Assembly (NCBI RefSeq): GCF_011386835.1 | Contig: NC_088802.1 | Coordinates: 2,232,001 to 2,296,000 of the forward strand | Direction: 5' to 3' | DNA: 64,000 nucleotides | Source: Chrysemys picta bellii | Taxonomy: Eukaryota | Part shown: positions 9,351 through 64,000 of the stretch, piece by piece | Position numbering within the stretch: the first letter of the stretch is position 1 | How the letters are laid out: each line of letters opens with the position of its first letter | Translations under genes and position numbers: made by a program | The notes under the pieces: generated by a model | What the model saw: the letters and a program-made list of their open reading frames with translations, nothing else | What the model was told of the DNA's origin: nothing | Database searches by the model: none

Positions 9351-9792
9351 CGCCGCGGCAGTGGCGCGTGAGGGCCGACGCCGGTCAGAGAGCAGCGCGC
9401 AGCCGCCGGATTCTGCTCTCGACATGCGCATTGGGAGCCGGGAGGCCGCGAGGGATTTGGATGCGCATGCTCAATAGGGAAGGAGGCTCGGACGTCTTCC
9501 TGCGTGGTAGTTACTCTGGGCAACAAATGGCGATCACCGCGCATGCGTATTACGCGCCCCCGAAGTGGCGACTGCCCACGCGCAGTGTGCAGCGGAGGGA
9601 AAAGCAAATTTTTACGCATGCGCACTCAGGCATCATCCCTGTGTGGGAGGGTCTAGACGCATGCGCACTGGAACACAGAGAAACAAAGGGAGTGGGCACA
9701 CGTGCCGCTGACTGCAAAGGGAACCGAAACTGAAATCAGGCGCATGCGCAAACCGCGCGCCCCCAACCCGGGGGTTAGCACAGCGCATGCGT
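9297..9792. promoter_or_regulatory. NRF1-motif cluster (8 sites)
   Basis: (G/A)CGCATGCG(C/T)-type sites at ~9297, 9422, 9462, 9538, 9614, 9657, 9740, 9783; YY1-like AAATGGCG at 9525. Confidence 0.7.
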
Positions 9793-10295
9793 CCGCGTCC
9801 CGCCCCCAACTGACCCTCTCACGTCCCCTAACGGCCACTGCCTGGAAGCGCGAGGCGCCTGTTCCCGACACGTTCTCCAGTCGCTGCGGCCGTTTAACTA
9901 ATTTGCATATTGCCCAGCATGCCGTTCCCCCTCCAACCCCGCCAGATAGCGTCATTTTTACCCCATTTCAATAAAAATTGAACTAAAAAAAATTAAAAGT
10001 ATTTACAGCCCATAACGATGTGATGTTACCCAAATTTCACTTCAGTAACTAAGACTATGTTATCTCACCCTAACCTCGATATATACTCGAAACATACCTA
10101 GGCATTGAGTTCTAATTAACATATTCATAATTAATCTTTAGGGGACTAGTTAGTTCACTAATAGGAGATGCTTGGTGCCAATTAACATTCTGGGGGCGGA
10201 TGAGCACAACGGGCGCCATGGAGTACAGCAGGGCCGGCAACCGGCGGAGCAGCAGCAGCGTCAGAGACGGTACAATAAGGCGAAGGCGTTCAGGA

Positions 10296-10486
10296 GGCCA
10301 CGCCCCGTCGGGGAGGCCACGCCCCCTTAGGGGCTAGACCGCGCCCATTCATTGGGCAGGCCACACCCCTTTGGGCAGGCCCCGCCCATCCCAGGAGAGG
10401 ACACACCCTCGTTGGGATGAGACCACACCCAATCATGTACACTGCTTTAAGAGAGGCCACGCCCCTCTTGGATTAGGCCACGCCCA
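10296..10486. promoter_or_regulatory. KLF/Sp motif cluster
   Basis: About 8 copies of GGCCAC(G/A)CCC or close variants. Confidence 0.6.
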
Positions 10487-10753
10487 TTTCTGATGGCTGC
10501 CAGTCCCACCCTGCTCTGACCCGCTAGACCCCACTCCCCTCCCAGTGCCAGGATAGAACCCAGGAGTCCGGGCCCCCTCCCCCCACATGTGTCTGTGCTG
10601 TAGTTCTCTGGTCTCCTGTTCCTATGCGCCTCAGTGGGGCACCTCCCATGATGCTCCACGCCCCTTCCCCGGGTCCCTCCCTTCCCTGCCCCCTCCTCTG
10701 AGCTTTGCAGTTTCACAGTGTCCAAATCCCCATTCACGCCAGGCAGCTACAGG

Positions 10754-11299
10754 ACTACAATTCCCATGGTGCCTTGCGGCTACATCGCCCCTCCCCCCGG
10801 GACACTTTGTATCATGGCGGTTGTAGTTTGATGGAGTCCAAAGCCCCATTCATCCCAATGGAGCTCTGGGAACGCAGGTACTACAACTCCCATAATGCCT
10901 TGCGGCACACCCCTGCGTCACTCAGGCCCCCTTCCTGCCTCGGGAGGGGTGTAGTTCTCGGGGACCCTGCTGCCCATGGAACCCTAGGAGGGCAATGCAG
11001 CCCGTGGACTACCAATCCCATACTGCCTTGCGGCACCGCCCCTGCACCGGGCTCCCCCGTGTGCACCACTCCCGGGGATGTAGTTCCGCGGGGCCCCGCT
11101 GACCAGTCATCCCAATGAGCCTCGGGCCGGTGGAGAACTACATCTCCCGCCACGCCCTGCGCCTCCCATCATTCTCCGCCCCTCGCCCCCCACGTGTCTT
11201 CCCGCTGTGCATTGTGGGAGCGATAGTTCCCGGGCGGCCCCGCTCCCGTCTTCCCCTATGGGGAGCCTCCGGCTGTAAAACTACATCCCCCGTGATGCC
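10754..11299. promoter_or_regulatory. ZNF143/THAP11 (SBS, ACTAYRnnnCCC) motif array upstream of CSNK2B exon 1
   Basis: Forward sites at 10754, 10880, 11008, 11137, 11280; reverse sites ending ~10828, 10956, 11085, 11227. Confidence 0.75.
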
Positions 11300-20018: not shown

Positions 20019-20685
20019 TGAGGGCCCCTGACTGACACCCAGGTAGCCTGGCAAATGCTAAAATCAAAAGGAAGTTTACATGGGGTTAAGATCTGTTGCA
20101 GCAGAAGTAGGGGCTCATTTGGGGTATGTCCAATGTCCACCCAGGGAAGCGATTACAGCTACCAGACTCCATCCCGAAGGGAGTGAAGATAGAGGCGAAG
20201 ACCGAGGTCGCTGGAGAGGGCGACAGAGATGAATAGACTGGTGTAAATCAGGATTAACCCTGTTTTCAGTGGAAACAAGGTCAGGATCAAGTCCTGAAAA
20301 GGCACCAGTTGTGGTTAGACAGGACTGAATCCTGACCTAGAACCCCAGCATGAATCCAGACCGAGTCCACCATCGTCAAAGGAGGCAATCCTTAAGTCAC
20401 ATCAACTTTTGAGTCTGTCTGGTTGACCTCTCACTGAGAGAAGGTCAAACTCTACCAACACCAGCAAACCTCAGAGCAGAATCCGGGTCATTGCCTGTAA
20501 CCCCCAAGACCCATTAGAATTATACCCAATATCTCTCACCCATGAACGTCTTCCACAATGGAAGAACAATGGTTTCTACTTTCTGGGGGAAGGGGAATCT
20601 GGGACAGTTTGCTTGTGAGTCTCTTCCACAATTAAACCATTCTGTTAATTGTACTTGGCTTGTTGAAGATCTAACCCCCCAGTAG

Positions 20686-21090
20686 CTAATACATCTTCTT
20701 CACCATCTCCAAGAGCGGTCCAGCCGGGATGTAGTTGACCATCTCCGCCACAGTCTTCACGATGTTCCTGCTGAAGACTCTGGCCACAGCAGTGTCCCAT
20801 CGGGGCATTTTGATGTTGTACTGGACTTGCCCTTCCACATGGAAGATGGATATTTCATTCTCCTGCGTGCCGGACACGAAGACCAGCACCGTGGTCTCGC
20901 TTTGGATGGTCATCCTGGCGTTCTGCTGGACACAAAGCGGCTCCTGGGAGAACTCACTCAGCGCTAGATTGAAACAGGCCTTGAGCTCCTCGGTCAGCCG
21001 CTTCCGGGACTCCAGACGCGTCCGGACCTGGAGAAGCCGCTCGATGCTCAGGGGTTCTGGGAGGGTGGATTTAACCACACACCCACCCAT
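20686..21090 (-). CDS. Uncharacterised 134-aa protein with one copy of the 98-aa domain (gene A)
   Basis: ORF MGGC..PEPLS..CF..A..F..EPLCVQQNARM..FVSG..ENEISI..G.VQY aligns with the repeats of 36065-38455; acceptor aatttccttcctttgtag| at 21142/21141; in-frame TGA two codons before cccATGG. Confidence 0.75.
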   Translation of the reverse strand: MGGCVVKSTLPEPLSIERLLQVRTRLESRKRLTEELKACFNLALSEFSQEPLCVQQNARMTIQSETTVLVFVSGTQENEISIFHVEGQVQYNIKMPRWDTAVARVFSRNIVKTVAEMVNYIPAGPLLEMVKKMY

Positions 21091-21981
21091 GGGTCATCCC
21101 CTGACCTTCACTGGGACTTGATCGCAGGAGACTAATACAATCTACAAAGGAAGGAAATTGGGGTTAGTTCCCTGGAGACCTGGGTTCACACCCATCCCCC
21201 CCTCACAAGTGAGATGAGTTTTCATTTGGTCTCAGCCTAGTTCGGTTAGTAGACCTAGTTGAAATAAACTGGAAACTGAGTAGACGGTCTTGTGACATGG
21301 ATGCTGCTGAGTTCAACACAATTTCTGGTCTCTACTTAGTCAGTGGAAGCCCCAGGGATAGAACCCAGGAGTCCTGGCTCCCAGCCCTCCCACTCAGAGT
21401 AGTCTATCTAAACATCCCATTTTACATACGGAGAAATGGAGGCACGGGCCGGGGGGGTGGGGAAGATACCTGACAAAGGTGGCTGGTGTTTTAAGATCTC
21501 CCAAGGGAATGCACCATTGTGTGGTCTTTAAGTCACCACCCTTGAGACTTCCAAGTGGGTCAGGAACGGGTGTCAGAACCTGGTGACTAGGGGTGGGCCC
21601 GAAATGGTTTTCCAATCCCAGAAACATTTGAGATGTCAAGAAAAATTCACTATTCTGCACTGGGATTGAGGTGAGCCCTTTCCGAGTCCTCTGTGTAAAA
21701 CCAGAGAGAGGCACCTGGTACGGACCCACCCCCTTATTTTGACCAAAAACTCCATCATGGACCCAAGTAATCGTCCCAACGAAGCAGTCTTTGACCCTTC
21801 CCCCTTCTGGCAGAAAGTTTCAGTTTCCACTAACTTTTGGGGGTCAAAATTCCCAGCCCGTCCTGCTCAATGCCCTTGCCCTCCCCATACTGCTGGGGCA
21901 GGGGGGTTAAAGTCCTGCTCCAGCTACATGGAAGAAAGCTACTGGCTTCCCCCCAGGTAGAGTTTCTCCAAGGTCGCTAAG

Positions 21982-22215
21982 GGTTACGTCTACACTGCAG
22001 TGCCAGCCCGCTGCACCGAATTGGAGTGCCCGGGTCAATTCGCTTGGGCTCAGAGCGACACAAGTGTAGACAGGCTCGGGCTAGAGACACGTCCACACCG
22101 CAGGGTTTGAGCCCAAGTCTAGCCCGAGCCTGACAACATCTACACTGCAATCTTATAGCCCCCAGCCAGCTGACCCAGGCCAGCCAGGGGGGTCTCATTG
22201 CCGTGTAGACGTACC
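21982..22215. mobile_element. PIF/Harbinger-type MITE
   Basis: TIRs GGTTACGTCTACAC / GTGTAGACGTACC; duplicate copy at 59630-59876. Confidence 0.75.
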
Positions 22216-22855
22216 TGGGGGCAGATACGTCCCCTCCACTCCAGGCTGTTCATGCTCAGCCAGAACCCCTGAACGTTCCCCATTACTCCCACACCATTGT
22301 TTGCCACTTAGCATGAAACCAGGGGTCAGATCCTCTCCCACACCCTAGGGATCAGCCCCCCTTTAACCAGCTGATTTACTTAGATTAACAGCAACTCAGG
22401 GCATGGACTATCCCAGCACAGCACAGCACAGCAGGTCCTGCAAGCTCAGATGGGACTAGATCCCAGGAGTCCTGACCCCCCACATGTGCTCTCCTCTAAC
22501 CCACTAGCCCCCACTCCCCTCCCAGAGCCAGGGAGAGAACCCAAGAGTCCTGGCTCCCAGCCCCCCTGCTCTAGCCACTGGGCCCCACTCCCCTCCCAGA
22601 GCTGGGGAGAGAACCCAGGCATCCTAGCCTTAAGCCCTACTATAATACACCTGTATACAGCAATTCCTCAGTTGACATACCCCCCCAGCAGTAGGTTCCA
22701 CAGGTTATTAAAGACACTCTTCAAGACACATTGGAAAGTTAAAGCATTCCTAGAACAGAGAACACAATACTAAAAGTTACAAGGGTTAAATAACAGGAAC
22801 AAGACTATAAGGACCCCTCTAGTCCTCCAAATCCTAGCCCCTCTTTAATCCTTAC

Positions 22856-23296
22856 CAGGTCAGGGGACTCTCCTGTAGCTTCCAGCCAAAAGAAAGACCA
22901 GACAACACATACCCCTCCAGCCACACACCTACACACAGCAATATAGTAGAACTAGTCACACTTGTGTCCTTTTTATAAGCAAGTGGCTCCCAAGGCAGGC
23001 TGGGAGTTGGGAGCTAGGAATGCTGGGAATTGTAGTTTCTTCATCAGTTTGCAAAAGGCTCCATTTCTGATTGGCCAGGGAACGAAAGGGATCCGGGCCC
23101 TACCATCTATCTAATACATTGGTCTTTTCTGCTCTTCCCTATCCAGGATATTAGCTCCGCTGTGATTGGCCCAGCCCACCCAGACAGCTGGGTCTCAAGG
23201 TTCTCCTGGCCACACCCTTCTCCTCTCTGATTGGTCAGTTCTTTAGAGCTTGGGGTGCCTGATTGGTCCCAAGGGGGGGTGTCCCAGCTATTTAAA
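22856..23296. promoter_or_regulatory. Divergent promoter of cassette A (minus-strand exon 1 plus galectin promoter)
   Basis: Minus TATAAAA at 22977-22971 and minus donor CTG|GTAAGG at 22856/22855; SBS GAATGCTGGGAATTGTAGT 23018-23036; ATTGG at 23070, 23118, 23165, 23230, 23262; plus TATTTAAA 23289-23296. Confidence 0.7.
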
Positions 23297-23369
23297 GCTC
23301 ATGGTTGGGTTAAGCCCCTATGGTGGTTGGTGCTGTGTGTGGTGTTGTGTTGTCTCTGGAGTAGCTGCA

Positions 23370-25775
23370 ATGGAGTGTGTGAGTTGTGGGAGTAGAGGGG
23401 TATTAAGGTTGGTTCTTTGGGGGGTGGGATGGGAGCTGTGGGAAGAGGTTGGTAGATATATAGGGCAGGAGGTCTGGTGGTAGGGGGTTGCTGGGTACTG
23501 GGGATATCTTTAATTCCTCTCCCTGGGCTGGGGGGGGGGCTGGTTGACCCCTAGTCCTGCCTCCTATCTGTATGGGGGAGTTGAGTCTGTCTCCTGGTAG
23601 CCAAGCCCCACCTGGTGACGGGGAAGCTGTGAGATCCCTGAGGTTGGGAGAGGGTGATTCCCTCTTCTAGGCCTGAGAGGGTCATGTTGAGGTGGGGGCA
23701 GGTGTAGTGGGCTGGAGGGGTCACAGCTTTGTTACCTGCAACCCTATGTGAAATTCATCTTCCTTGTTTGCTCCCCACCTGGTGCCCCCTAGAGGGGACA
23801 GGCCCCATTCCCTGAGCCAGCCAGTCCCTGCCCTGGGGCTGGATGGGTACTGGTGCCCCCTAGAGGGGACAGGCCCTTGCCCTATTCCCCCACCCCCTTG
23901 AGCCAGCCAGTCCCATGCCCTAGGGCTGGGTTGGGGCCTGTGCCCCATTCCCTGCCCCCTGTGGGGAGGGGTGCTGGGGGGTGCTCACCTCTCCCCCTTT
24001 CCCCAACCCCCAGGGGATGGTTCTGACCCACTTGAAGGTCCAGCCTGGTGAGTGCATTGCTGTGAAGGGGATGGTGCCACTGGATGCCAAGAGGTGAGTG
24101 TGGGCTGACGGGCATGGGGAGGGAAGGGTTAACCTGATCCTGGGGGGGGAATGCTGGGGTCCCCCTGCCCCCCAACAGCACAGTGGGGGACTCTCTGGGA
24201 CCCCAGGATGGGGCTCAGCCCCCCACAGGGGGCAGCATCTCCCTGCAGACCCCTCACCCCCTGGGTCTGCATCATCTCAGCCCCCCTGAATCCTCCAGGG
24301 CCCCCCTGCCTCAGCCCTGACCCCTTTCAGGGGGAGCTGTGGGGATGGGGTGTGTGCCAGTGGATTCCCCCATGGGATGGGGGGCTGGTCTCCTCAGGAC
24401 TGACCCCTGGGGTGTCCATGGCCCCAGCACCTTCTCTGTGGGGCTGGCTCTCAGTCCCCTGCATGGGATGAGCTCAGTGGGACAGAGCCCCACAGACTGT
24501 GGGGCCTGGGCTGCAGGGGGACTGGGGCTGGCGTTGGTCCCCTGATGCTCCTCTCCACCCCAGGAAGGGGCTGGAGGGTGGCAGAGAGGATGCTGGGAAA
24601 GCTGTGCCATAGGCTGGTGCATTGTGGGAAGCTCCCAGGTGATGCCCAGCAGGTGACCCTGCTGCTGAGGATGGTGGGAAACTGTCCCACAAGGCAGCAG
24701 GGCTGTGGCTTTAGCCCAGGGGATTCTGGGAGACCTGCCTGTGACCCAGAGCCTGTGGGGGTGACAGCAGGGGATGCTGGAGAATTCCCATGATGCAACG
24801 CATGTCACTGCAGGGGGCTCCATGATGCAGCACTGTCCCAGAGGATGCTGGGAAGCTTCCCACAATGCACCAGTGCAATAAATTGAGCAGAGGGAATTCT
24901 GGGAGATTCTCCCATGGTGCAGGGGGTGATGGGGAATTTCCCATGATCCCCTGTGTGGCAGAGGGGTGGCTGGAGGCTTCCCACAATGCAAAGTGAGTGG
25001 CTGTCCCTGTTTGGGGGTGGGTGGGGGGCTGGGGAAGCTGCCTGGCCCAGGTGGGGGGTCCCAGCCTGTCTCTCTCCCCTCCAGCTTTGCCCTGAACATG
25101 GGCCGGGCCGGCTCGGACCTGGCCCTTCACTTCAACCCCCGGTTCGAGAGCCATGGGGACGCTCGCATAATCATCTGCAACTCGCTGCAGGGCGGGGAGT
25201 GGGGGGAGGAGCAGCGGGAGCCGGACTTCCCCTTCCAGCCGGGGCAGGATACCAAGGTGAGGGGGGGACTGTCCAGGGGAAGATCACAGCTCCCATTCAT
25301 GATGTGAGATGGGTGGGGGGCAGGGCATTGTGGGGTGGGGGGAGAAGGCTACCCTCAAAGAGAGGGATCTACCATCTGTGGGGCACTGTCTGGGGAAGAC
25401 TGCAGCTCCCATTTGCTGGGGTCAACTGAATGGGGGGGAGGGGAGGCAGGGCACTGTGTGGGGAAGATCACAGCCACCCCATCTCAAGCAGATGAGTCTA
25501 TTGCAAGTGGGGGATGTCTCAGTCCTTGTTGGGATCAGGGGAGGGGGGTGTAAGGTTGGGATGATATTTAACCCTGTAGGGGGCAGGTGTCTCTGGCTCC
25601 ACCCCTCACCCTCTGGCTCCTCCCCCAGATCTGCATCTCCTTCGATGCCCAGGAGCTGACGGTGGCGCTGCCGGGGGAGCAGCAGCTGAAATTCCCCAAC
25701 AGGCTGGGGCTGGAGGCCATCGAATTCTTCTCAGTGGAGGGAGACTTCAGGGTCAAGTCCATCAAGTTCAAGTAG
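23370..25775 (+). CDS. Galectin-1-like prototype galectin, copy A, 135 aa
   Basis: Exons 23370-23378 (MEC), 24014-24093, 25085-25256, 25629-25775 = 9/80/172/147 nt, the LGALS1-type structure; sugar-binding residues H44 N46 R48 H52 N61 W68 E71 R73 all present; AATAAA 25828-25833. Confidence 0.95.
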
Positions 25776-26560
25776 CTCCTCCCCTTCCCCATGGCTCCAC
25801 CCCCTCCATGGGGGGTTAAAATCTACCAATAAACATGAATCTGCTCATCACCCTGTGCTGTCCCTGGGCTCGTTATTCACCCCAGTGCAGCCTGGGAGCT
25901 GGGATTGGGGCCTGGCCCATGGGAGCTGGCTGGGTGGAGCTGGGCAGGCAGGGGGCACTAGACCCCAGGGGGGTGTGTGTGTGTGTGGGGGGGGGGATTC
26001 TCCTTTGGGGACATGAATCCCTCTGGGATTCATACAGGGGAGGGGGGGAATCTAGGGGTGCAATACTAGAACATTGCCTTGTGGTTGGGAGCCAGGACTC
26101 CTGGGTTCTCTCCCTCCAGAGAGGTTTCCCCTGCCATGGCAGGGAGAGGACAGGGGGTGTCACACCATTTTTCACCTTCTCTTCCACGTTGAATTTTTAT
26201 CTTGACTGTCTCTCTGGCTAGTAGGCGCATGAGGTGAAAGGTCCTATTTCCCCCTTACCCTAGAGCCAGCTGCTGGCCTCATCCTGGGGCCAGATTAGAG
26301 CTAGGCCACCTATGGGGGAACAGGTCCCATTGCCTAAACCGGCTGTTCTCATGCTGGAGTCTGTGGGCCCAGGGGGTCCATGGACACTGCACAGGGGTCT
26401 ACAAAATAGTATGGGGGGGAACCTCACTGCTCACATGTGTTCAGAGCAGATGCATGGGAGGTGGGGGTGTCATCCTCTACATTTGTGCCTTCCATTAGCC
26501 CCTGGTGCTGATGGGGGGGGGGGGGGGGGGGCAGAGCAGGGGGGTCCCCTGGGTGAGCTT

Positions 26561-36064: not shown

Positions 36065-38455
36065 TTAGTCCCTGCCAGACACTTTGTAGTTCATGAGAAG
36101 TCTAGCAATCCATGGCCAACCTCCTGACACCTGAACCGTGTACTGGATTCTCCCCTCTTCACCTTCACACACGGTGATTAAATTCTCCCCCCACCCGGAG
36201 ACAAACTCCAGCTCCTGCCCATCCCACCGGATCAGCAGCCTGGCGTTCTCCAGCACGCACCGGGGCTCCTGGCAGAAACCCTGCCAGGCTCGGTCAAAAC
36301 AGGTTCTCAGGGCGTCAGTGTCTCTATGACAGGACCCCAGTTCACTCAACACGCTCCGTAGGGTGTCAGCACTCAGTGACAGCCGGCGGGCGCGTAGCTG
36401 AGCCAGGTACACATGCACTGGGATCTTCACAACACGGTACTGGGCTTTCCTGTCCCTATAGCTCACGGAGATCTCACACTGCCCCTCCCCTGAGAGGAAC
36501 TGCAGGCTCCCCCCATCCCACCGGATCCTCATCCTGGCGTTCCCTTGCACCCACGGGGGCTCCTGGCTGAACTGGGAAATGGCCTCCCCAAAGCAGCCGC
36601 TCAGCTCCTCACCCAGCCCCCCCCAGCGCCACATTCTGTCCCGCACCCTCGCTAGGTCTGCGACACTCAGCGGTTCTGAGCTGGCATGTGACCAAGTCAC
36701 TGGCCTGTCCCCTCCCAGCTCTGTGATGTGATACTGGGGTCTCCCATCGGCGAGGAGCACCGAGATCTCACACTGCCCCTGGCCGGAGACAAACTCCAGC
36801 TCCTCCCCGCCCCACCGGATCAGCAGCCTGGCGTTCTCCTGCACACACCGGGGCTCCTGGCAGAAACCCTGCCAGGCGCAGTGAAAACAGGCTCTGAGAT
36901 CATCTCTGTCCCCCATACATGACCCCAGTTTGTCCCGCACTCTCCACAGCGTGTCAACGCTCACTGGTTCTGGGCGGGCGCGTAACCGAGCCAGGTACAT
37001 GTGCATAGGGAGCTCCCCAACCTCGTACTGGGGTGTCCCGTCCCTACAGTACACAGAGATCTCACACTGCCCCTCACCCGAGAGGAACTGCAGGTTCCCC
37101 CCGTCCCAGCGGATCAGCAGCCTGGCGTTCCCCTGCACACACCGGGGCTCCTCGCGGAAACCCTGCCAGGCACAGAGAAAACAGGCTCTCAGAGCGTCAG
37201 TGTCTCCATGACAGGACCCCAGTTCACTCAACACTCTCCGTAGGGTGTCAGCGCTCAGTGACTCTCGGCAGGTGTGTAGCCGAGCCAGGTACACAGGCAC
37301 TGGGATCTTCACAACACGGTACTGGGGTTTCCCATCCTCATAGCGCACAGTGATCTCACATTCCCCCTTCCCCGAGGTGAACTCCAGCTCCTCCCCACTC
37401 CACCGGATCAGCAGCCTGGCGTTCTCCTGCACACACCGGGGCTCCTGGCGGAAACCCTGCCAGGCGCAGTGAAAACAGGCTCTGAGATCATCTCTATCCC
37501 CCATACATGACCCCAGTTTGTCCCGCACACTCCACAGGGTGTCGGCACTCAGTGGTTCTGGGTGGGCGCGTAACCGAGCCAGGTACATGCGCATGGGGAG
37601 CTTCCCAATGTCATACTGGGGTCTCCCGTCCCTGTAGCGCACGGAGATCTCACATTCCCCGTCCCCTGAGAGGAACTCCAGGCTCCCCCTGTCCCACTGG
37701 ATCCCCATCCTGGCATTCCTCTGCATGCACGGGGGCTCCCGGCTGAACTGGGAAATGGCCTCCCCAAAGCAGACACTCAGTTCCTCACCCAGCGCCCCCC
37801 AGCGCCCCAGTCTGTCCCGCACCCTCGCTAGGTCTGCGACACTCAGCGGCTCTGGGCTGGTGTGTGACCAAGTCACTGGCCTGTCCCCTCCCAGCTCTGT
37901 GATGTGATACTGGGGTCTCAGCTCGGTGTGGAGCACCAAGATCTCACACTGCCCCTGGCCGGAGATGAACTCCAGCTCCCCCCCGTCCCAGCGGATCAGC
38001 AGCCTGGCGTTCTCCTGCACACACCGGGGTTCCCGGCAGAACCTCTCCAGGGCGAGGTCCAGGCAGCTGCCCAGCTCCTCGCCCAGCTCCCCGCATCGCT
38101 CCAGTCCGTCCTGCGCTCCCTGCAGGGTCTCCATGCTCAGCAGCTGGGGGCGGGCGCGTAACCTGGCCAGACACACATCCCCCGTGGGCTCAGCGACGTG
38201 GCACTGGGGCTCCCCATCGGTGTCACACACGCGCATCTCACACTCCCCGTCCCCTGAGGTGAGCATCAGCTCTGCCCCCTGGCTTGGGATGGCCCTCCTG
38301 CAGCTGCCCTGTACACCCGGGGGTTTTCTGGGGGACTCACACAGGCCCCGAGCCAAAGAGCTGCTCTGGGGTTTGGCCTTTTCCTCCCACATCTTCACTC
38401 TTGGCTGCACAGTCTGTTGTTTTTTCTCATTCTCCGTTTCCGGAGCCTGAACCAC
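36065..38455 (-). CDS. Uncharacterised tandem-repeat protein, 8 x 98-aa domain (gene B); first in-frame ATG at 38392
   Basis: 796-codon ORF; NAR motif at aa 149, 247, 345, 443, 541, 639, 737 and a degenerate unit at 51; no indels; homologous to gene A. Confidence 0.85.
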   Translation of the reverse strand: MVQAPETENEKKQQTVQPRVKMWEEKAKPQSSSLARGLCESPRKPPGVQGSCRRAIPSQGAELMLTSGDGECEMRVCDTDGEPQCHVAEPTGDVCLARLRARPQLLSMETLQGAQDGLERCGELGEELGSCLDLALERFCREPRCVQENARLLIRWDGGELEFISGQGQCEILVLHTELRPQYHITELGGDRPVTWSHTSPEPLSVADLARVRDRLGRWGALGEELSVCFGEAISQFSREPPCMQRNARMGIQWDRGSLEFLSGDGECEISVRYRDGRPQYDIGKLPMRMYLARLRAHPEPLSADTLWSVRDKLGSCMGDRDDLRACFHCAWQGFRQEPRCVQENARLLIRWSGEELEFTSGKGECEITVRYEDGKPQYRVVKIPVPVYLARLHTCRESLSADTLRRVLSELGSCHGDTDALRACFLCAWQGFREEPRCVQGNARLLIRWDGGNLQFLSGEGQCEISVYCRDGTPQYEVGELPMHMYLARLRARPEPVSVDTLWRVRDKLGSCMGDRDDLRACFHCAWQGFCQEPRCVQENARLLIRWGGEELEFVSGQGQCEISVLLADGRPQYHITELGGDRPVTWSHASSEPLSVADLARVRDRMWRWGGLGEELSGCFGEAISQFSQEPPWVQGNARMRIRWDGGSLQFLSGEGQCEISVSYRDRKAQYRVVKIPVHVYLAQLRARRLSLSADTLRSVLSELGSCHRDTDALRTCFDRAWQGFCQEPRCVLENARLLIRWDGQELEFVSGWGENLITVCEGEEGRIQYTVQVSGGWPWIARLLMNYKVSGRD

Positions 38456-57217: not shown

Positions 57218-58811
57218 ATGTTTCTTCTTAGCAACAAGAAGAAAGTCAAGGAAAGTGTGGGCCCCTTACTGAATGAGGGAGGCAACCTAGTGACAGAGGA
57301 TGTGGAAAAAGCTAATGTACTCAATGCTTTTTTTGCCTCTGTCTTCACAAACAAGGTCAGCTCCCAGACTGCTGGACTGGGCAGCACAGTATGGGGAGGA
57401 GGTGACCAGCCCTCTGTGGAGAAAGAAGTGATTCGGGACTATTTAGAAAACCTGGACGAGCACAAGTCCATGGGGCCAGATGCGCTGCATCCGAGGGTGC
57501 TAAAGGAGTTGGCGAATGTGATTGCAGAGCCATTGGCCATTATCTTTGAAAACTCATGGCGATCGGGGGAGGTCCTGGATGACTGGAAAAAGGCTAATGT
57601 AGTGCCTATCTTTAGAAAAGGGAAGGAGGAGGATCCGGGGAACTACAGGCCAGTCAGCCTCACCTCAGTCCCTGGAAAAATCATGGAGCAGGTCCTCAAG
57701 GAATCAATTATGAAACGTTTAGAGGAGAGGAAAGTGATCAGGAACAGTCAGCATGGATTCACCAATGGGAAGTCGTGCCTGACTAACCTAATTGCCTTCT
57801 ATGAGGAGATAACTGGCTCTGTGGATGAGGGGAAAGCAGTGGATATGTTATTCCTTGACTTTGGCAAAGCTTTTGATACGGTCTCCCACAGTATTCTTGC
57901 CGGCAAGTTAAAGAAGTATGGGCTGGATGAATGGACTGTAAGGTGGATAGAAAGCTGGCTAGATCGTCGGGCTCAACGGGTAGTGATCAATGGCTCCATG
58001 TCTAGTTGGCAGCTGGTTTCAAGCGGAGTGCCCCAAGGGTCAGTCCTGGGGCTGGTTTTGTTTAATATCTTCATTAATGATCTGGAGGATGGTGTGGACT
58101 GCACTCTCAGCAAGTTTGCAGATGACACTAAACTAGGAGGCGAGGTAGATACACTAGAAGGTAGGGATCGGATAGAGAGGGACCTAGACAAATTAGAGGA
58201 TTGGGCCAAAAGAAACCTGATGAGGTTCAACAAGAACAAGTGCAGAGTTCTGCACTTAGGACGGAAGAATCCCATGCACTGCTACAGACTAGGGACCGAA
58301 TGGCTAGGTAGCAGTTCTGCAGAAAAGGACCTAGGGGTCACAGTGGACGAGAAGCTGGATATGAGTCAACAGTGTGCTCTTGTTGCCAAGAAGGCTAACG
58401 GCATTTTGGGCTGTATAAGTAGGGGCATTGCCAGCAGATCGAGGAACGTGATCGTTCCCCTCTATTTGACATTGGTGAGACCTCATCTGGAGTACTGTGT
58501 CCAGTTTTGGGCCCCACACTACAAGAAGGATGTGGAAATATTGGAAAGAGTCCAGCGGAGGGCAACAAAAATGATTAGGGGGCTGGAGCACATGACTTAT
58601 GAGGAGAGGCTGAGGGAACTGGGATTGTTTTGTCTGCAGAAGAGAAGAGTGAGGGAGGATTTGATAGCTGCTTTCAACTACCTGAAGGGGGGTTCCAAAG
58701 AGGATGGAGCTCGGCTGTTCTCAGTGGTGGCAGATGACAGAACAAGGAGCAATGGTCTCAAGTTGCAGTGGGGGAGGTCCAGGTTAGATATTAGGAAACA
58801 CTGTTTCACTA
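57218..58811 (+). mobile_element. CR1 LINE ORF2 (RT) segment, truncated at both ends
   Basis: 546-aa open frame with [39 protein letters not shown]; ends at TTTCACTA before the 3'UTR. Confidence 0.95.
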
Positions 58812-59629
58812 TTTCACCATCACAAAGTGAGATGAGTTTTCATGTGGTCTCAGCCTAGTTGTTAGTAGACCTAGTTGAAATAAACTGACCAGTTTCCCTC
58901 CCCCTCCTTGTGACATGTATGGTGCTGAGTTGAACATCATTTCTGGTCTCCACTTAGAGGAGTCTAGTGGGTTAGAGTGGGGGGGGGGGAGGAGGAGGAG
59001 CCAGGATTCCTGGGTTCTCACCCCAGCTCAGGGAGGGGAGGGGCGGGGCAGGGCAGCTGGGAGCTAGGACTCTTAGGTTCTATCCCTGGGCCTTCCACTG
59101 ACTGTATAAATGTCCCATTTTGCAGATGGAGAAATGAAGGCACAGGGGGGGGGGCGGGGAGAGAAGATACTTGACAAAGGTGGCTGCTGTTTTAAGATCT
59201 CCCAAGGGAATGCACCATTGTGTGGCCTTTAAGTCACCACCCTTGAGACTGCCGTATTGGCGAACCGGGAAGTGGGTCAGGAATGGGCATCAGAACCTGG
59301 TGACTAGGGATGGGCCCAAAATGGTTTTCCTATCACAGAAACATTTCAGATTTCAAGAAAACTTCGCTATTCTACACCGGGATTGAGGTGATCCCTTTCC
59401 AAGTCCTCTGTGTAAAACCAGAGAGAGGCTCCTGGGACGGACCCTGCCCCCTTCTGGCTGAAAGTTTCAGTTTCCACTAACTTTTGGGGGTCAAAATTCC
59501 CAGCCCATTCTGCTCGATGCCCCTGCCTTTCCCATACTGCTGGGGCAGGGGGGTTTAAGTCCTGGTCCAGCTACATGGAAGAAAACTACTGGCTCCTCCC
59601 CTAGGTAGAGTTTCTCCAAGGTCACTAAG

Positions 59630-59876
59630 GGTTACGTCTACACTGCAGTGCCAACCCGCTGCACCAAATTAGAGTGCCCAGGTCGATTCGCTTGGGCTCG
59701 GAGCTACAAGTGTGTAGACATTAGGGCTCGGGCTAGAGCCAGGCCCACCCTGCAGGGTTTGAGCCCAGGTCTAGCCCAAGCCTGAACATCTACACTGCAA
59801 TCTTATAGCCCCCAGCCCACACCCCAGTCAGCTGATCCAGTCCAGCCAGGGGGCCTCATTGCCGTGTAGACGTACC
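59630..59876. mobile_element. PIF/Harbinger-type MITE (duplicate of 21982-22215)
   Basis: TIRs GGTTACGTCTACAC / GTGTAGACGTACC. Confidence 0.75.
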
Positions 59877-60482
59877 TGTGTTCAGATACTGCCCCTCCAC
59901 TCCAGGCTGTTCATGCTCAGCCAGAACCCCAGAACTTTCCCAATGATTCCCACACACTCTTGTTTGCTACTTGCACAAAACCGGGGGTCAGATCATCCCC
60001 CACACCCTAGGGATCAGTCCCCCTTTAACCATCTGATTTACTCAGATTAACAGCAACTCAGGGCATGGACTGTCTCTGCACAGCATGGCAGGTCCTGAAA
60101 GCTCAGATGGGAATAGAACCCAGGAGTCCTGACCCCCCACATGTGCTCTCCTCTAACCCACTAGCCCCCATTCCCTTCCCAGAGCTGGGGAGAGAACCCA
60201 GGAGCCCTAGCTCCCAGCTCCCCCTGCTCTAACCCACCCAACCCCACTCCCCTCCCAGAGCCAGGGAGAGAACCCAGGCATCCTAGCCTTAAGCCCTACT
60301 GTAATACACCTGTCTGCAGCAATCCCTCAGTTAAAGTACCCCCCAGACATGGGTATTAAAGACACTCATCAAGACACATTGGAAAGTTAAAGCATTCTTA
60401 GGAAAAAGTACTAAAAGTGATAAAAGTTAAATAACAAGAACAAGCCTATAAGAACCCCACCCCTCAAATCCTAACCCCTTAC

Positions 60483-60937
60483 CAGGTCAGGGGACTCTCC
60501 TGTATCTTCCAGCCAAAAGAAAGACCAGACAGCACATACCCCTTCAGCCACACAACTGCATACAACTGCACACAGCAATATAGTGAAACCAGCCCCATTT
60601 GTGTCCTTTTTATAAGCAAGTAGCTCCCAAGGCAGGCTGGGAGTTGGGAGCTAGGAATGCTGGGAATTGTAGTTTCTTCATCAGTTTGCAAAAGGCTCCA
60701 TTTCTGATTGGCCAGGGAATGAAAGGGGTCCGGGCCCTAGACACCATCTGTCTAATACATTGGTCTTTTCTGCTCTTCCCTAGCTGGGAATATGAGCTCC
60801 ACTGTGATTGGCCCAGCCCACCCAGACAGCTGGAGCTCAAGGTTCCCCTGGCCACACCCCTCTCCTCTCTGATTGGTCAGTTCTTTAGGGCTTGGGATGC
60901 CTGATTGGTCCCAAGGGGGGTGTCCCAGCTATTTAAA
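60483..60937. promoter_or_regulatory. Divergent promoter of cassette C
   Basis: Minus donor at 60483/60482; minus TATAAAA 60614-60608; SBS 60655-60673; five ATTGG; plus TATTTAAA 60930-60937. Confidence 0.7.
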
Positions 60938-61000
60938 GCTCATGGTTGGGCTAAGCCCCTATGGTGGTTGGAACTGGGTGTTGTGTCTGGAGTAGTTATA

Positions 61001-61151
61001 ATGGAGTGTGTGAGTTGTGGAAGCAGAGGGGTGTTAAGGCTGGTTCTCTGGGGGTAAGATGAGAGCTGTGGGAAAAGATTGGTTGATATGTGGGGCTGGA
61101 GGCCTGATGGCAGGGGGTTGCTGGGTACTGGGGGTATCTTTAATTCCTCTC

Positions 61152-61191
<40 letters not shown>

Positions 61192-63445
61192 GGGGGGGGT
61201 GGGTGGGTTGACCCCTAGTCCTGCCCCCTGTCTGTATTGGGGAGTTGAGTCTGTCTCCTGGTAGCCAAGCCCCACCTGGTGACTGGGAAGCTGTGAGTTC
61301 CCTGAGGTTGGGGGAGGGTGATGTTGTGGGGGGGCAGGTGTAGTGGGCTGGAGGGGTCACAGCTTTGTCACCTGCAACCTTGTGTGAAATTCATCTTCCT
61401 TGTCTGCTCCCCATCTAGTGCCCCCTAGAGGGGACAGGCCCTATTCCTGGTCCCCCTGAGCCAGCCAGTCCCTGCTCTAGGGCTGGATTGGGGTCTCTGC
61501 CCCCTGTGGGAAGGGGTGGTGGGAGTGACTGGGGGTGCTCACCTTTCCCCCACCCCCAGGGGATGGTTCTGACCCACTTGAAGGTCCAGCCCGGCGAGTG
61601 CATCGCCGTGAAGGGGATGGTGCTGCCGGATGCCAAGAGGTGAGTCTGGGCTGATGGGTGTGAGGAGGGAAGGGTTAACTTGATCCCTGGGGGGCAATGC
61701 TGGGGTTCCCCTGCCCCCCAACAGCACAGTGGGGGAGTCTCTGGGACCTATACATCTCCCTGAAGGCATCTCAGTCCTGGATCTGCATCCTCAGACCCCC
61801 CTGAATCCTCCAGGGTCCCCTGCCTCTGCCCTGACCCCCTTCAGGGGGAGCTGTGGGGATGGGGTGTGTACCAGTGGACTCCCCCATGGGATGGGGGATG
61901 GTCTCCCCAGGACTGACCCCTGAGGTGTCTATGGCCCCAGCCCCTTCTGTGGGGCTGGCTCTCAACCCCTGCATGGGGTGAGCTCAGTGGGACAGAGCCC
62001 CACAGACTGGGGGGCCTGGGCTGCAGGGGGACTGGGGCTGCGTTGGGCCCGTTGATGCTCCTCTCCACCCTGGGAAGGGGCCGGAGGGCGGCAGAGGCGA
62101 TGCTGGGAAAGCTGTGCCATAGGCTGGTGCAATGTGGGAAGCTCCCAGGTGATGCCCAGCAGGTGACCCTGCTGCTGAGGATGGTGGGAAACTTTCCCAC
62201 AAGGCAGCAGGGCTGTGGCTTTCTCCCAGGGGATTCTGGGAGACTAGCCTGTGACCCAGAGCCTGTGGGGGTGACAGCAGGGGATGCTGGAGAATTCCCA
62301 TGATGCAACACATGTCACTGCAGGGGGCTCCATGATGCAGCACTGTCCCAGAGGATGCTGGGAAGCTTCCACCAGTGCAACAAATCGAGCAGAGGGAATT
62401 CTGGGAGATTTTCCCATGGTGCAGGGCAGCAGGGGATGATGAGGAATTTCCCATGATGCTCTGCATGGCACAGGGGTGGCTGGAGGCTTCCCACAATGCA
62501 AAGCAAGTAGCTGTCCCTGTTTGTGGGGGGGCCCTGGGGTGGGATCCCCGCTGGCCCCTGGGGAAGCTGCCTGGCCCAGGCAGCGGGTCCCAGCCTGTCT
62601 CTCTCCCCTCCAGTTTTGCCCTGAACATGGGCCGGGCTGGCTCAGACCTGGCCCTTCACTTCAACCCCCGGTTCGAGAGCCACGGGGACGCCCGCATCAT
62701 CATCTGCAACTCGCTGCAGGGTGGGGAGTGGGGGGAGGAGCAGCAGGAGCTGGACTTCCCCTTCCAGCCGGGGCAGGACACCAAGGTGAGGGGGGCACTG
62801 CCTGGCGGGAGATCCCAGCTCTCCCTCTGTGGGGTGGACTGATTGTGTGTGTGTGTGTGTGTGTGTATGAATCTTGAGCTCCTTGGTAGCAAACACAGCC
62901 CTCTTCTCTCCTAGCTAGGGTGGGGTGATGGGTACTGTTTGGGGGAAGATCACAGCTCCTGTTCATGATGTGAGATGGGCGGGGGGCAGGGCATTGTGGG
63001 GTGAGGGTAGATCCCTCTCTTTGAGGGCAGCCTTCTTCCATCTCTGGGGGACTGTGGGGGAAAATCACAGCTCCCGTTTGCTGGGGTCAGCTGAACGAGG
63101 GGGAGGAGGCAGGGCACTGTGTGGGGAAGACTGCAGCCACCCCATCTTGAGCAGATGAGTCTATTGCTAGTGGGGATGTCTCCAGTCCTGCTTGGGATGT
63201 GAGGGGGGGGGTGGGGGGTGTAAGGTTGGGATGATATTTAACCCTGTAGGGAGCAGGTGTCTCTGGCTCCACCCCTCACCCTCTGGCTCCTCCCCCAGGT
63301 CTGCATCTCCTTCAATGCCCAGGAGCTGACGGTGGCGCTGCCGGGGGAGCAGCAGCTGAAATTCCCCAACCGGCTGGGGCTGGAGGCTGTTGAATTCTTC
63401 TCAGTGGAGGGAGACTTCAGGGTCAAGTCCATCAAGTTCAAGTAG
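61001..63445 (+). CDS. Galectin-1-like prototype galectin, copy C, 135 aa, R73Q
   Basis: Exons 61001-61009, 61560-61639, 62614-62785, 63299-63445; intact frame and splice sites; WGEEQQEL instead of WGEEQREP; AATAAA 63520-63525. Confidence 0.93.
61155..61188. repeat. (GT)n microsatellite
   Basis: About 17 GT units in galectin C intron 1. Confidence 0.95.
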
Positions 63446-64000
63446 CTCCACCCCTTTCCTGCTGGCTCCTCCCCTTCCCTGATGGCTCCGCCCCCTCCAT
63501 GGGGAGTTAAAAACCTACCAATAAACATGAATCTGCTCGTCACCTTGCGCTGTCCCTGGGCTCGTTATTCACCCCAGTGCAGCCTGGCTGGGTGGAGGCC
63601 AGGCAGGCAGGGGGCGCTAGACCTGTGTTTGTGGGGGGGATTCTCCTTTGGGGACAAGGATCCCTCTGGGACTTGTATAGAGGATGGAGGAATCTAGGGG
63701 TGCAATACTGGAACATGGTCTAGTGGCTGGGAGCCAGGACTCCTGGGTTCCCTCCCTGGCTCTGGGAGGGGAGTGGGGTCTGGGGATTATGGGATGGGGG
63801 GGGCTGGGAGCCAGGACTCCTGGGTTCTCTCCTTGCCATGGTAAGGGAAAATGGAGAGAGAGGAAAGGGGGTTGCACCCTTTTCACCTTCTCCTCTCCCA
63901 CTTTGAATTTTTTTATCTTTACCTTCTCACTGTCTAGTAGCCCCTTGAGGAACAAGGTCCCATTTTTCCCCCCCACCCTGGGGCCTGATTAGAGCCAGGC

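What the first reader, a model, noticed from the sequence alone, without database searches (positions are those of the whole stretch)
22856..23296. Compact ~320-bp back-to-back promoter with a TATA box at each end
Minus TATAAAA with a short first exon and strong donor, a near-canonical ZNF143 site, five reverse CCAAT boxes and plus TATTTAAA ~80 bp before the galectin ATG. Every element is retained in copy C (60483-60937) despite surrounding divergence. TATA boxes at both ends are uncommon in bidirectional promoters and argue for co-regulation.
Basis: partly seen in the sequence, partly recalled or inferred. Interest (0 to 1): 0.7.

Follow-up and report, generated by a model that had tools for sequence, protein, structure and literature searches.

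The report
Conserved two-TATA divergent turtle promoter
A roughly 375-bp stretch between a small orphan turtle gene and a galectin gene is a real head-to-head promoter with a TATA box at each end, and it is kept across all major turtle lineages; this layout is uncommon but of a known kind, and co-regulation of the two genes is not yet shown.

Summary

**Minus side.** RNA-derived contigs from 3 runs (2 studies, 2 organism labels) carry exactly the predicted minus-strand splice, 22856 joined to 21141. In the one strongly expressing run, depth falls from about 1086 to about 2 between 22920 and 22960. That is where the minus TATAAAAA (22977-22970) predicts a start.

**Conservation.** The module is conserved in copy C and in the orthologous loci of Caretta, Emydura (a side-necked turtle) and Carettochelys. 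It comprises both TATA boxes, the minus donor, the ACTACANNTCCC/ZNF143-type site, a second SBS-like block, three to five inverted CCAAT boxes, an E-box, a CACCC box and the ATG mini-exon. The TATA-to-TATA distance is 289-333 bp. Two paralogous loci without a galectin keep the minus TATA and donor, but the plus TATA and the galectin donor have decayed. This ties each TATA to its own gene.

**Not shown.**
- The galectin start site: no contig covering exon 1 was displayed.
- Factor binding.
- Sharing of elements, or co-regulation. One run has gene A without spliced galectin.
- An exclusive minus start. Low-level transcripts also cross the minus TATA or splice in from an upstream exon.

**Verdict.** This is a new member of a known kind, of moderate interest. 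The scan had not noted it on other DNA.

The parts
20686..21141 (-). Gene A exon 2: acceptor at 21141, 51-nt 5'UTR, CDS 21090-20686 (134 aa, no Pfam family)
   Evidence: ORF. No Pfam hit. Joint 21141/22856. The acceptor polypyrimidine-AG is conserved in Caretta, Emydura and Carettochelys (read on the reverse strand for the last two).
22856..22947 (-). Gene A noncoding exon 1. The 3' end at 22856 is shown by reads. The 5' end near 22947 is inferred from TATA spacing and an Inr-like CTACTAT.
   Evidence: joint with CT..AC ends (minus GT..AG) in X1 (depth 1086, 65 nt on this side), X2 (53 nt) and X5 (72 nt). The X1 contig stops at 22920, and depth in 22961-23157 is 1.96.
22970..22977 (-). Minus-strand TATA box TATAAAAA
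   Evidence: Identical in copy C, Caretta and Emydura; TATAAAAG in Carettochelys. Kept as TATAAAAA or TATTAAAA in the galectin-less paralog loci L004 and L002.
22989..23006 (-). Second SBS-like site (CTCCCAGCCTGCCTTGGG) inside a palindromic block. This is the most conserved 30 bp of the promoter.
   Evidence: CCCR at positions 3-6 and C at position 12; 87% of columns 22980-23009 are invariant in 5 sequences.
23012..23036 (-). ACTACAA plus an 18-bp Staf/ZNF143-type binding site (SBS)
   Evidence: It matches ACTACANNTCCC exactly and meets the CCCR and C12 criteria quoted from PMC3082894. Identical in C and Caretta; ACTACAGCTCCC in Emydura; ACTTCAACTCCC in Carettochelys.
23070..23266 (-). Array of five inverted CCAAT boxes (ATTGG starting at 23070, 23118, 23165, 23230, 23262). 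Four share the form TGATTGGYC.
   Evidence: Boxes 1, 3 and 4 are conserved in all five orthologous sequences. Box 2 is lost in Emydura and Carettochelys. Box 5 is deleted in Carettochelys.
23185..23190 (.). Conserved E-box CAGCTG
   Evidence: invariant in all five sequences.
23210..23217 (+). Conserved CACCC/GC-type box (CCACACCC; CCACGCCC in Emydura, CCATGCCC in Carettochelys)
23289..23296 (+). Plus-strand TATA box TATTTAAA, 82 bp before the galectin ATG
   Evidence: Identical in all five orthologous sequences. Decayed to TATCTAGA in paralog loci without a galectin.
23371..23379 (+). Galectin A coding exon 1 (ATGGAGTGT), with donor GTGAGT at 23380
   Evidence: Conserved with GTRAGT in all orthologs. 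The annotated 135-aa galectin genes of Caretta, Emydura and Carettochelys begin at the homologous ATG.
24014..24093 (+). Galectin A exon 2
   Evidence: Sequence. Joint 24091->25083 (GT..AG, cut +2) in X1, X2 and X5.
25085..25256 (+). Galectin A exon 3 (Gal-bind_lectin)
   Evidence: Pfam PF00337, E=7e-15. Joints.
25629..25775 (+). Galectin A exon 4 with stop codon
   Evidence: Pfam PF00337, E=1.7e-7. Joint 25254->25627 (cut +2) in X1 and X5.
60483..61009 (.). Copy C of the whole module: TTTTATA at 60608, ZNF143 pattern at 60654-60673, ATTGG at 60707/60759/60807/60872/60904, TATTTAAA at 60930-60937, ATG at 61001

Best explanation
The interval from about 22947 to about 23320 is a genuine, anciently conserved divergent (head-to-head) RNA polymerase II promoter region.

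- **Minus side.** A TATAAAAA box directs initiation about 30 nt downstream. This gives a 92-nt noncoding first exon that is spliced (22856 to 21141) onto the single coding exon of the orphan gene A. Two ZNF143/Staf-type sites, one carrying the ACTACA extension, lie 45-90 bp upstream of that start.
- **Plus side.** A TATTTAAA box lies about 30 nt before the inferred start of a galectin-1-like (16-kDa lectin-like) gene. Inverted CCAAT boxes (presumed NF-Y sites) sit at about -58 and -90, with a CACCC box and an E-box behind them.
- **Class.** The region is CpG-poor and has a TATA box at both ends, so it belongs to the regulated, focused-initiation class of promoter and not to the usual CpG-island bidirectional class.

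Shown here: the motifs, their deep conservation, the minus-strand splice, and a 5' end within 22920-22960 in the high-expressing sample. Inferred: the exact start sites, the galectin start, binding by NF-Y and ZNF143, and any sharing of the central elements between the two genes.
For: **Reads.**
- The joint 21141/22856 with minus-strand GT..AG occurs in X1 (depth 1086), X2 and X5. These are two studies and two organism labels.
- The X1 exon-1 contig ends at 22920. The next bin (22961-23157) has depth 1.96, so more than 99% of transcripts there end within about 27 nt of the TATA-predicted start.
- Galectin joints 24093/25085 and 25256/25629 are present in the same runs. The X1 exon 3 contig matches copy A with 1 difference in 163.

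**Statistics.** All 60 motif positions are identical in copy C and Caretta, a result reached by none of 2578 shifted constellations. The core is the most conserved noncoding 340 bp of the locus in both comparisons.

**Orthologs.**
- Gene A and the galectin lie head to head next to CSNK2B in Caretta, Emydura and Carettochelys.
- Both TATA boxes, the donor, the SBS block, CCAAT 1, 3 and 4, the E-box, the CACCC box and the ATG mini-exon are retained.
- The TATA-to-TATA distance is 326-333 bp, or 289 bp in Carettochelys.

**Natural deletion test.** Paralog loci L002 and L004 have no galectin exons within 7-10 kb. They keep the minus TATA and donor, while the plus TATA became TATCTAGA and the galectin donor GT became GA.

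**Other.** No Rfam family lies in the region. Literature: ACTACANNTCCC/ZNF143 and NF-Y motifs are among the few motifs enriched in bidirectional promoters (PMC3082894), and a CCAAT array bound by NF-Y drives the Mrps12/Sarsm pair (PMC1802594).
Against: - Only assembled contigs were available. They carry no strand or true end information, so the minus start is bracketed, not mapped.
- No displayed contig covers galectin exon 1 (23371-23379) or a joint to 24014, so the plus start is untested.
- In the low-expressing runs, contigs of similar depth to the spliced form run across the minus TATA (X2 22892-23131, X5 22919-23090).
- One X5 contig joins 22927/8 to 24738-24799, which would be a GC-AG intron. 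Some transcripts therefore start upstream.
- X4 shows gene A (depth 78) without spliced galectin, which argues against strict co-expression.
- Copy C keeps the minus half although no gene-A-like coding exon follows it within the duplicated segment.
Confidence: 0.78

Rival explanations
1. Two independent unidirectional promoters merely abut. Gene A uses TATA plus the SBS block (and perhaps CCAAT1). The galectin uses TATTTAAA plus CCAAT3-5, CACCC and the E-box. No element is shared and the genes are not co-regulated.
For: The motifs partition spatially. The SBS sites lie 45-90 bp from the minus start and about 300 bp from the plus start, while CCAAT4/5 lie at -58 and -90 from the plus start. X4 has gene A at depth 78 but only an unspliced low-depth galectin contig, and X5 has more galectin than gene A. 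Paralogs without a galectin still keep the minus core promoter.
Against: X1 and X2, from the same study, go up and down together for both genes (about 1000 and 670-1875, against 3.9 and 2.5). Depths of contigs are a poor measure, however. The TATA-to-TATA spacing is held at 326-333 bp in four of the five sequences over a long time. The galectin-less paralogs also lost the SBS block, and they kept CCAAT1 and CCAAT5, so the halves are not cleanly separable. NF-Y is reported to act bidirectionally (PMC1802594).
Confidence: 0.35
2. The minus TATA is not the working start. Gene A is transcribed from further upstream (inside or beyond the galectin gene, antisense to it), and 22856-22928 is an internal exon.
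For: X5 contig 24 links 20890-21141, 22856-22927 and 24738-24799. An AG lies at 22930-22929, and a GC donor is possible at 24738-24737. X2 and X5 contigs cross the TATA.
Against: All of this evidence is at depth about 5. In X1 the exon is at depth 1086, while 22961-23157 is at 1.96 and 24734-24930 is at 1.09, and the X1 contig has no unlaid letters. The TATA is conserved in seven sequences, including the paralogs. The 24738-24799 stretch is only 66-87% identical in Caretta.
Confidence: 0.1
3. The motif cluster is a chance or repeat-derived coincidence in the upstream region of a galectin gene and has no function on the minus strand.
For: Single TATA-like heptamers are common: 14 TATAAAA in 64 kb counting both strands. 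SINE-like repeats flank the region.
Against: The promoter bins have low, non-repeat depth in all runs. Conservation extends to side-necked turtles. A spliced minus-strand RNA is observed.
Confidence: 0.02

Closest known systems
Vertebrate histone H2A/H2B divergent gene pairs (Sturm, Dalton & Wells 1988, cited in PMC2670823; architecture recalled from my own knowledge, paper not held)
   Same: A short shared intergenic promoter of a few hundred bp, with a TATA box at each end and several CCAAT boxes between them. It is one of the few known classes with TATA boxes in both orientations.
   Different: The histone pairs carry an octamer/H2B box and are S-phase regulated. No ATTTGCAT is present here. 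Here the partners are an orphan gene and a galectin, the minus gene has a spliced noncoding first exon, and ZNF143-type sites are present.
Mouse and human Mrps12/Sarsm bidirectional promoter (PMC1802594)
   Same: A compact divergent promoter governed by an array of CCAAT boxes (4 there, 3-5 here) that bind NF-Y. The authors describe NF-Y as inherently bidirectional.
   Different: That promoter is under 200 bp and of housekeeping, proliferation-linked type. This one is CpG-poor and has TATA boxes at both ends. NF-Y binding has not been tested here.
ZNF143/Staf-dependent human bidirectional promoters carrying the ACTACANNTCCC motif (PMC3082894)
   Same: An exact ACTACANNTCCC match followed by an SBS with CCCR at positions 3-6 and C at position 12. 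There are two adjacent SBS-like sites, as in the BUB1B construct used in that paper.
   Different: Those promoters are mostly GC-rich, CpG-island and TATA-less. Here CpG observed/expected is 0.09 and both sides have a TATA box.
Galectin-1 family gene structure (my own knowledge; hits are named '16 kDa beta-galactoside-binding lectin-like' or 'galectin-1-like')
   Same: A four-exon gene with a tiny first coding exon (9 nt here), an 80-nt exon 2 and a 172-nt exon 3, with a TATA-type proximal promoter.
   Different: In turtles the gene lies beside CSNK2B in the MHC class III neighbourhood, head to head with a reptile orphan gene, and is tandemly duplicated.

Membership tests
Bidirectional (divergent) promoter, positional definition | Two genes on opposite strands, head to head, with starts less than 1 kb apart | tested here: met
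   Minus exon 1 ends at 22856 and its 5' end lies between 22920 and 22960. The galectin ATG is at 23371. The same arrangement holds in L005, L012 and L013.
Bidirectional (divergent) promoter, positional definition | Transcription actually initiates in both directions from the interval | tested here: inconclusive
   The minus side is bracketed by contigs only, with no true 5' ends. For the plus side, no contig over exon 1 was displayed.
Bidirectional promoter, functional definition (shared elements, co-regulation) | Common cis elements drive both genes, and their expression is correlated | tested here: inconclusive
   Contig depths are concordant in X1, X2 and X5 and discordant in X4. The tool warns that depth cannot rank genes.
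CpG-island, TATA-less bidirectional promoter class | GC-rich, overlapping a CpG island, no TATA box | tested here: not met
   GC is 51% and CpG observed/expected is 0.09-0.12. A TATA box is present on both sides.
Staf/ZNF143 binding site | An 18-bp SBS with CCCR at positions 3-6 and C at position 12, with an optional ACTACAN directly 5' (PMC3082894) | tested here: met
   TTCCCAGCATTCCTAGCT preceded by ACTACAA. A second site is CTCCCAGCCTGCCTTGGG; the pattern is unique to copies A and C.
Staf/ZNF143 binding site | Occupied by ZNF143 in cells | not testable with these tools
   This needs ChIP or EMSA in turtle cells.
NF-Y multi-CCAAT promoter | CCAAT pentamers with NF-Y-type flanks, clustered within about 60-250 bp of a start | tested here: met
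   There are five ATTGG, and four have the form TGATTGGYC. Boxes 4 and 5 lie at about -90 and -58 from the inferred plus start.
NF-Y multi-CCAAT promoter | Bound by NF-Y | not testable with these tools
   This needs EMSA or ChIP.
Histone H2A/H2B-type double-TATA divergent promoter | Octamer / H2B-specific element between the TATA boxes | tested here: not met
   No ATTTGCAT or ATGCAAAT lies in 22800-23400.
snRNA-type (Pol III type 3) promoter with Staf site and TATA | A small structured RNA gene directly downstream of the TATA box | tested here: not met
   No Rfam match lies in 22000-23500 even at E<=1. The downstream sequence is a spliced exon.

The most novel reading that the evidence does not exclude
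The two-TATA, CpG-poor divergent promoter is a functional coupling device held for more than 200 million years. On this reading it co-induces a secreted or cytosolic galectin together with an orphan reptile protein of unknown fold in the MHC, which would imply that the two products work together. The galectin-less paralogs and the gene-A-less copy C would then be natural uncoupling experiments.
Probability: 0.2. Interest if true: 0.6.

Novelty: new member of a known kind. Interest (0 to 1): 0.4.

Why it matters
**Rarity of the type.** Bidirectional promoters are overwhelmingly CpG-island and TATA-less. A deeply conserved CpG-poor example with a TATA box on each side is a rare, well-delimited case. 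It also carries two of the motifs reported as enriched in bidirectional promoters: ACTACANNTCCC/ZNF143 and CCAAT/NF-Y.

**Use for experiments.** It could be used to ask how directionality and co-induction are set in focused, regulated promoters.

**Use for annotation.**
- It gives the orphan gene A a defined promoter and a first exon.
- It gives a likely expression partner, the galectin. That is the only functional lead so far for this reptile gene family.

Tried and rejected
- **Exact look-up of the gene A protein** found nothing.
- **Logan contigs as transcripts.** The contigs carrying gene A or galectin relatives (L001, L006-L011, L014, from runs SRR336775xx) looked at first like unspliced transcripts. 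They are colinear with the genome across introns and 96-97% identical to Caretta, so they are DNA of a sea turtle and say nothing about splicing.
- **First 'orthologs'.** L002 (Caretta), L003 (Mauremys) and L004 (Chelydra) turned out to be paralog loci without a galectin. L003 aligned too poorly to use.
- **MHC SXY (RFX/CREB/NF-Y) module** upstream of the Y-box-like CCAAT1. I considered this by eye and rejected it, because no X1/X2-like sequence sits at the right spacing.
- **Octamer/H2B box:** absent.
- **Small-RNA gene behind the Staf site and TATA:** none.
- **Paper search** for a turtle MHC galectin description found nothing relevant. The Sturm 1988 paper is not held.
- **Spliced galectin model.** Exon 3 was searched through an unspliced ORF reference. 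The full-length protein search, and any look-up of mRNA contigs by the joined product, were left out.
- **Reads rules.** Read laying was given 5901 letters.

Full report
**Setting.** The window is vertebrate DNA with no N runs. Earlier notes of this scan call it painted-turtle MHC. My own searches fit a turtle: the nearest relatives of both genes are turtle sequences.

A segment of about 5 kb, 21200-26115 (copy A), is repeated at 58817-63757 (copy C) with about 84% identity. Each copy carries a four-exon galectin-1-like gene on the plus strand. Pfam PF00337 matches exons 3 and 4, and splice joints are seen. Copy A has gene A on the minus strand: a 134-aa ORF at 21090-20686 with no Pfam family. 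Gene A-like domains otherwise occur only in gene B, at 36.1-38.1 kb on the minus strand.

**The observation.**
- TATAAAAA lies on the minus strand at 22977-22970.
- The minus donor is CCTG|GTAAGG, with exon 1 ending at 22856.
- ACTACAA followed by an 18-bp Staf/ZNF143-type site lies on the minus strand at 23036-23012.
- ATTGG boxes start at 23070, 23118, 23165, 23230 and 23262.
- TATTTAAA lies at 23289-23296, and the ATG at 23371.

The first coding exon is 9 nt (ATGGAGTGT|GTGAGT). That makes the four exons (9+80+172+147 nt) add up to 135 codons plus a stop.

The cluster is not a chance event.
- The ZNF143 pattern with up to 3 mismatches occurs only in copies A and C, against an expectation of 0.00.
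- All eight TGATTGGYC in the 64 kb lie in the two promoters, against 1.7 expected.
- Five same-orientation ATTGG within 200 bp were reached in only 5 of 300 shuffles.

The interval is CpG-poor, with observed/expected 0.09 at 51% GC. It shows ordinary, non-repeat depth in all runs, whereas the flanking SINE-like repeats show very high depth.

There is a second SBS-like site at 23006-22989 inside a palindromic block, an E-box CAGCTG at 23185, and a CACCC box at 23210.

**RNA evidence.** Only Logan contigs were available, so strand, level and true ends cannot be read directly.

Splicing.
- The joint 21141/22856, skipping 1714 nt with CT..AC ends (GT..AG on the minus strand), is present in X1 (depth 1086), X2 and X5. 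These are two studies and two organism labels.
It also shows that these runs are RNA.

The 5' end in the high-expressing run.
- In X1 the exon-1 side of the contig runs to 22920.
- The mean depth of bin 22764-22960 (358) is fully explained by that one contig.
- The next bin has depth 1.96.
- In that sample more than 99% of gene A transcripts therefore end between 22920 and 22960.
- A start 30 nt from the T of the TATA box would be A22947, in an Inr-like CTACTAT.

Other starts in low-expressing runs.
- In X2 and X5, contigs of about the same depth as the spliced form (about 5) cross the TATA box (22892-23131 and 22919-23090). Both match copy A, not copy C.
- One X5 contig joins 22927/8 to 24738-24799, inside galectin intron 2. 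This is only interpretable as a GC-AG intron.
- I read this as weak upstream, antisense-to-galectin initiation on top of a strong regulated TATA-proximal start. That reading is an inference.

The galectin side.
- The joints 24093/25085 and 25256/25629 are confirmed.
- The X1 exon 3 contig differs from copy A at 1 of 163 positions, so galectin A itself is expressed there.
- No displayed contig covers exon 1, so the plus-side start remains untested.

Depths across runs.
- Gene A against galectin depths are about 1000 and 670-1875 in X1, 3.9 and 2.5 in X2, 5-7 and 27-35 in X5, and 78 and about 3.6 in X4. The X4 galectin contig is unspliced.
- This hints at co-expression in one study and shows discordance in another.
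- The tool itself warns against ranking by contig depth.

**Conservation within the genome and with Caretta.**
- Against copy C and against the orthologous Caretta locus L005, all 60 motif positions are identical. None of 2578 rigidly shifted motif constellations reaches 60; the maximum is 58.
- The core 22960-23299 is 95% identical to C and 91% to Caretta. Other noncoding sequence is 80% and 81% with gaps counted, or 88.6% and 86% for substitutions only.
- No other 340-bp noncoding window of the locus is as conserved (0 of 2374).

**Deep conservation.** Homologue searches and locus look-ups gave three loci.
- Caretta, L005.
- Emydura macquarii, a side-necked turtle, L012.
- Carettochelys insculpta, L013.

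In all three, a gene A orthologue and a 135-aa galectin lie head to head beside CSNK2B. The five-sequence alignment keeps the following:
- both TATA boxes;
- the minus donor CTTACC;
- the SBS block, where 87% of columns 22980-23009 are invariant;
- the ACTACA-type site, with one mismatch in Carettochelys;
- CCAAT 1, 3 and 4, the E-box and the CACCC box;
- ATGGAGTGT|GTRAGT.

CCAAT2 is lost in Emydura and Carettochelys, and CCAAT5 is deleted in Carettochelys. The distance from TATA to TATA is 326-333 bp in four sequences and 289 bp in Carettochelys. The exon 2 acceptor of gene A is also conserved. From my own knowledge, the split between side-necked and hidden-necked turtles is roughly 200 million years old.

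**A natural experiment.** Two paralogous gene-A-like loci, L002 in Caretta and L004 in Chelydra, have no galectin exons within 7-10 kb.
- The minus TATA survives there, as TATTAAAA in L002 and TATAAAAA in L004.
- The donor, CCAAT1 and CCAAT5 also survive.
- The SBS block and CCAAT3 are deleted, and CCAAT2 is mutated.
- The plus TATA has become TATCTAGA, and the galectin donor GT has become GA.

This ties the plus TATA to the galectin and the minus TATA to the gene-A-like gene.

Conversely, copy C keeps the whole minus half, although its duplicated segment stops at about 58820. That is just short of where a gene-A-like exon would be, and repeat-like sequence follows. What its minus exon joins to, if anything, is unknown.

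**Comparison with what is known.**
- Published surveys state that most bidirectional promoters lack TATA, are GC-rich and coincide with CpG islands.
- They list the motifs over-represented in them as GABPA, NRF1, YY1, NF-Y and ACTACANNTCCC. The last of these is part of the ZNF143/Staf site (PMC3082894).
- An array of four CCAAT boxes bound by NF-Y drives the Mrps12/Sarsm pair (PMC1802594).
- The nearest architectural analogue with two TATA boxes and several CCAAT boxes is the histone H2A/H2B pair. This rests on my own knowledge; the Sturm 1988 paper is not held. Its octamer element is absent here.
- A Pol III snRNA-type reading (Staf site plus TATA) is excluded by the splice and by the lack of any Rfam match.

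**Verdict.** This is a real, ancient, CpG-poor divergent promoter with a TATA box at each end. Co-regulation through shared elements, the exact start sites (especially on the galectin side) and factor binding remain inferences. It is a new member of a known kind, of moderate interest.

- I did not build a joined (spliced) galectin protein. Exons were handled by reference only.
- Read laying received 5901 letters.

Noticed in passing
window 24738-24799 (minus) and 24600-24850: One low-depth X5 contig joins gene A exon 1 (from 22927/8) to 24738-24799, inside galectin intron 2 and antisense to the galectin. The only canonical reading is a GC-AG intron. The same stretch is 95-99% identical between copies A and C but only 66-87% identical to Caretta.
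   Followed up: partly
window 22984-23008: A near-palindrome (GCTCCCAAGG CAGG CTGGGAGTT) is the most conserved part of the whole promoter, with 87% of columns invariant across five turtle sequences. That is more conserved than any CCAAT box. It contains a second SBS-like site.
   Followed up: partly
window 58500-58820 and 36065-38455: Copy C keeps the minus TATA, exon-1-like sequence and donor. Its duplicated segment ends at about 58820 in repeat-like sequence, with no gene-A-like coding exon. The next gene-A-like sequence on that strand is the multi-repeat gene B, about 20 kb further on.
   Followed up: no
L002:7290-7850 and L004:4690-5240: Caretta and Chelydra carry a paralogous gene-A-like locus (76-77% protein identity) with a relic of the galectin promoter and mini-exon but no galectin exons. 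In Chelydra the exon 2 acceptor AG reads AT.
   Followed up: partly
L005:1-2604 and 9695-11250: Caretta also has two tandem gene-A-like copies about 8 kb apart, each about 86% identical to window 20402-22600. Tandem duplication of this unit is therefore not confined to the window's species.
   Followed up: no
window 22910-22860 (minus): Gene A exon 1 holds a short upstream ORF (ATG at 22910, TGA at 22862-22860). The ATG is kept in Caretta but not in Emydura.
   Followed up: partly
window 25169: All four runs read C where the window has A, in galectin exon 3. The window base is either a private allele or an assembly error.
   Followed up: no
window 21340-21400, 22458-22640, 23780-23950, 25960-26110: A short GC-rich interspersed repeat (…GGGAGAGAACCCAGGAGTCCTGGCTCCCAGCC…) recurs many times in the window and draws depths in the thousands in every run. 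It breaks most contigs at these places.
   Followed up: no
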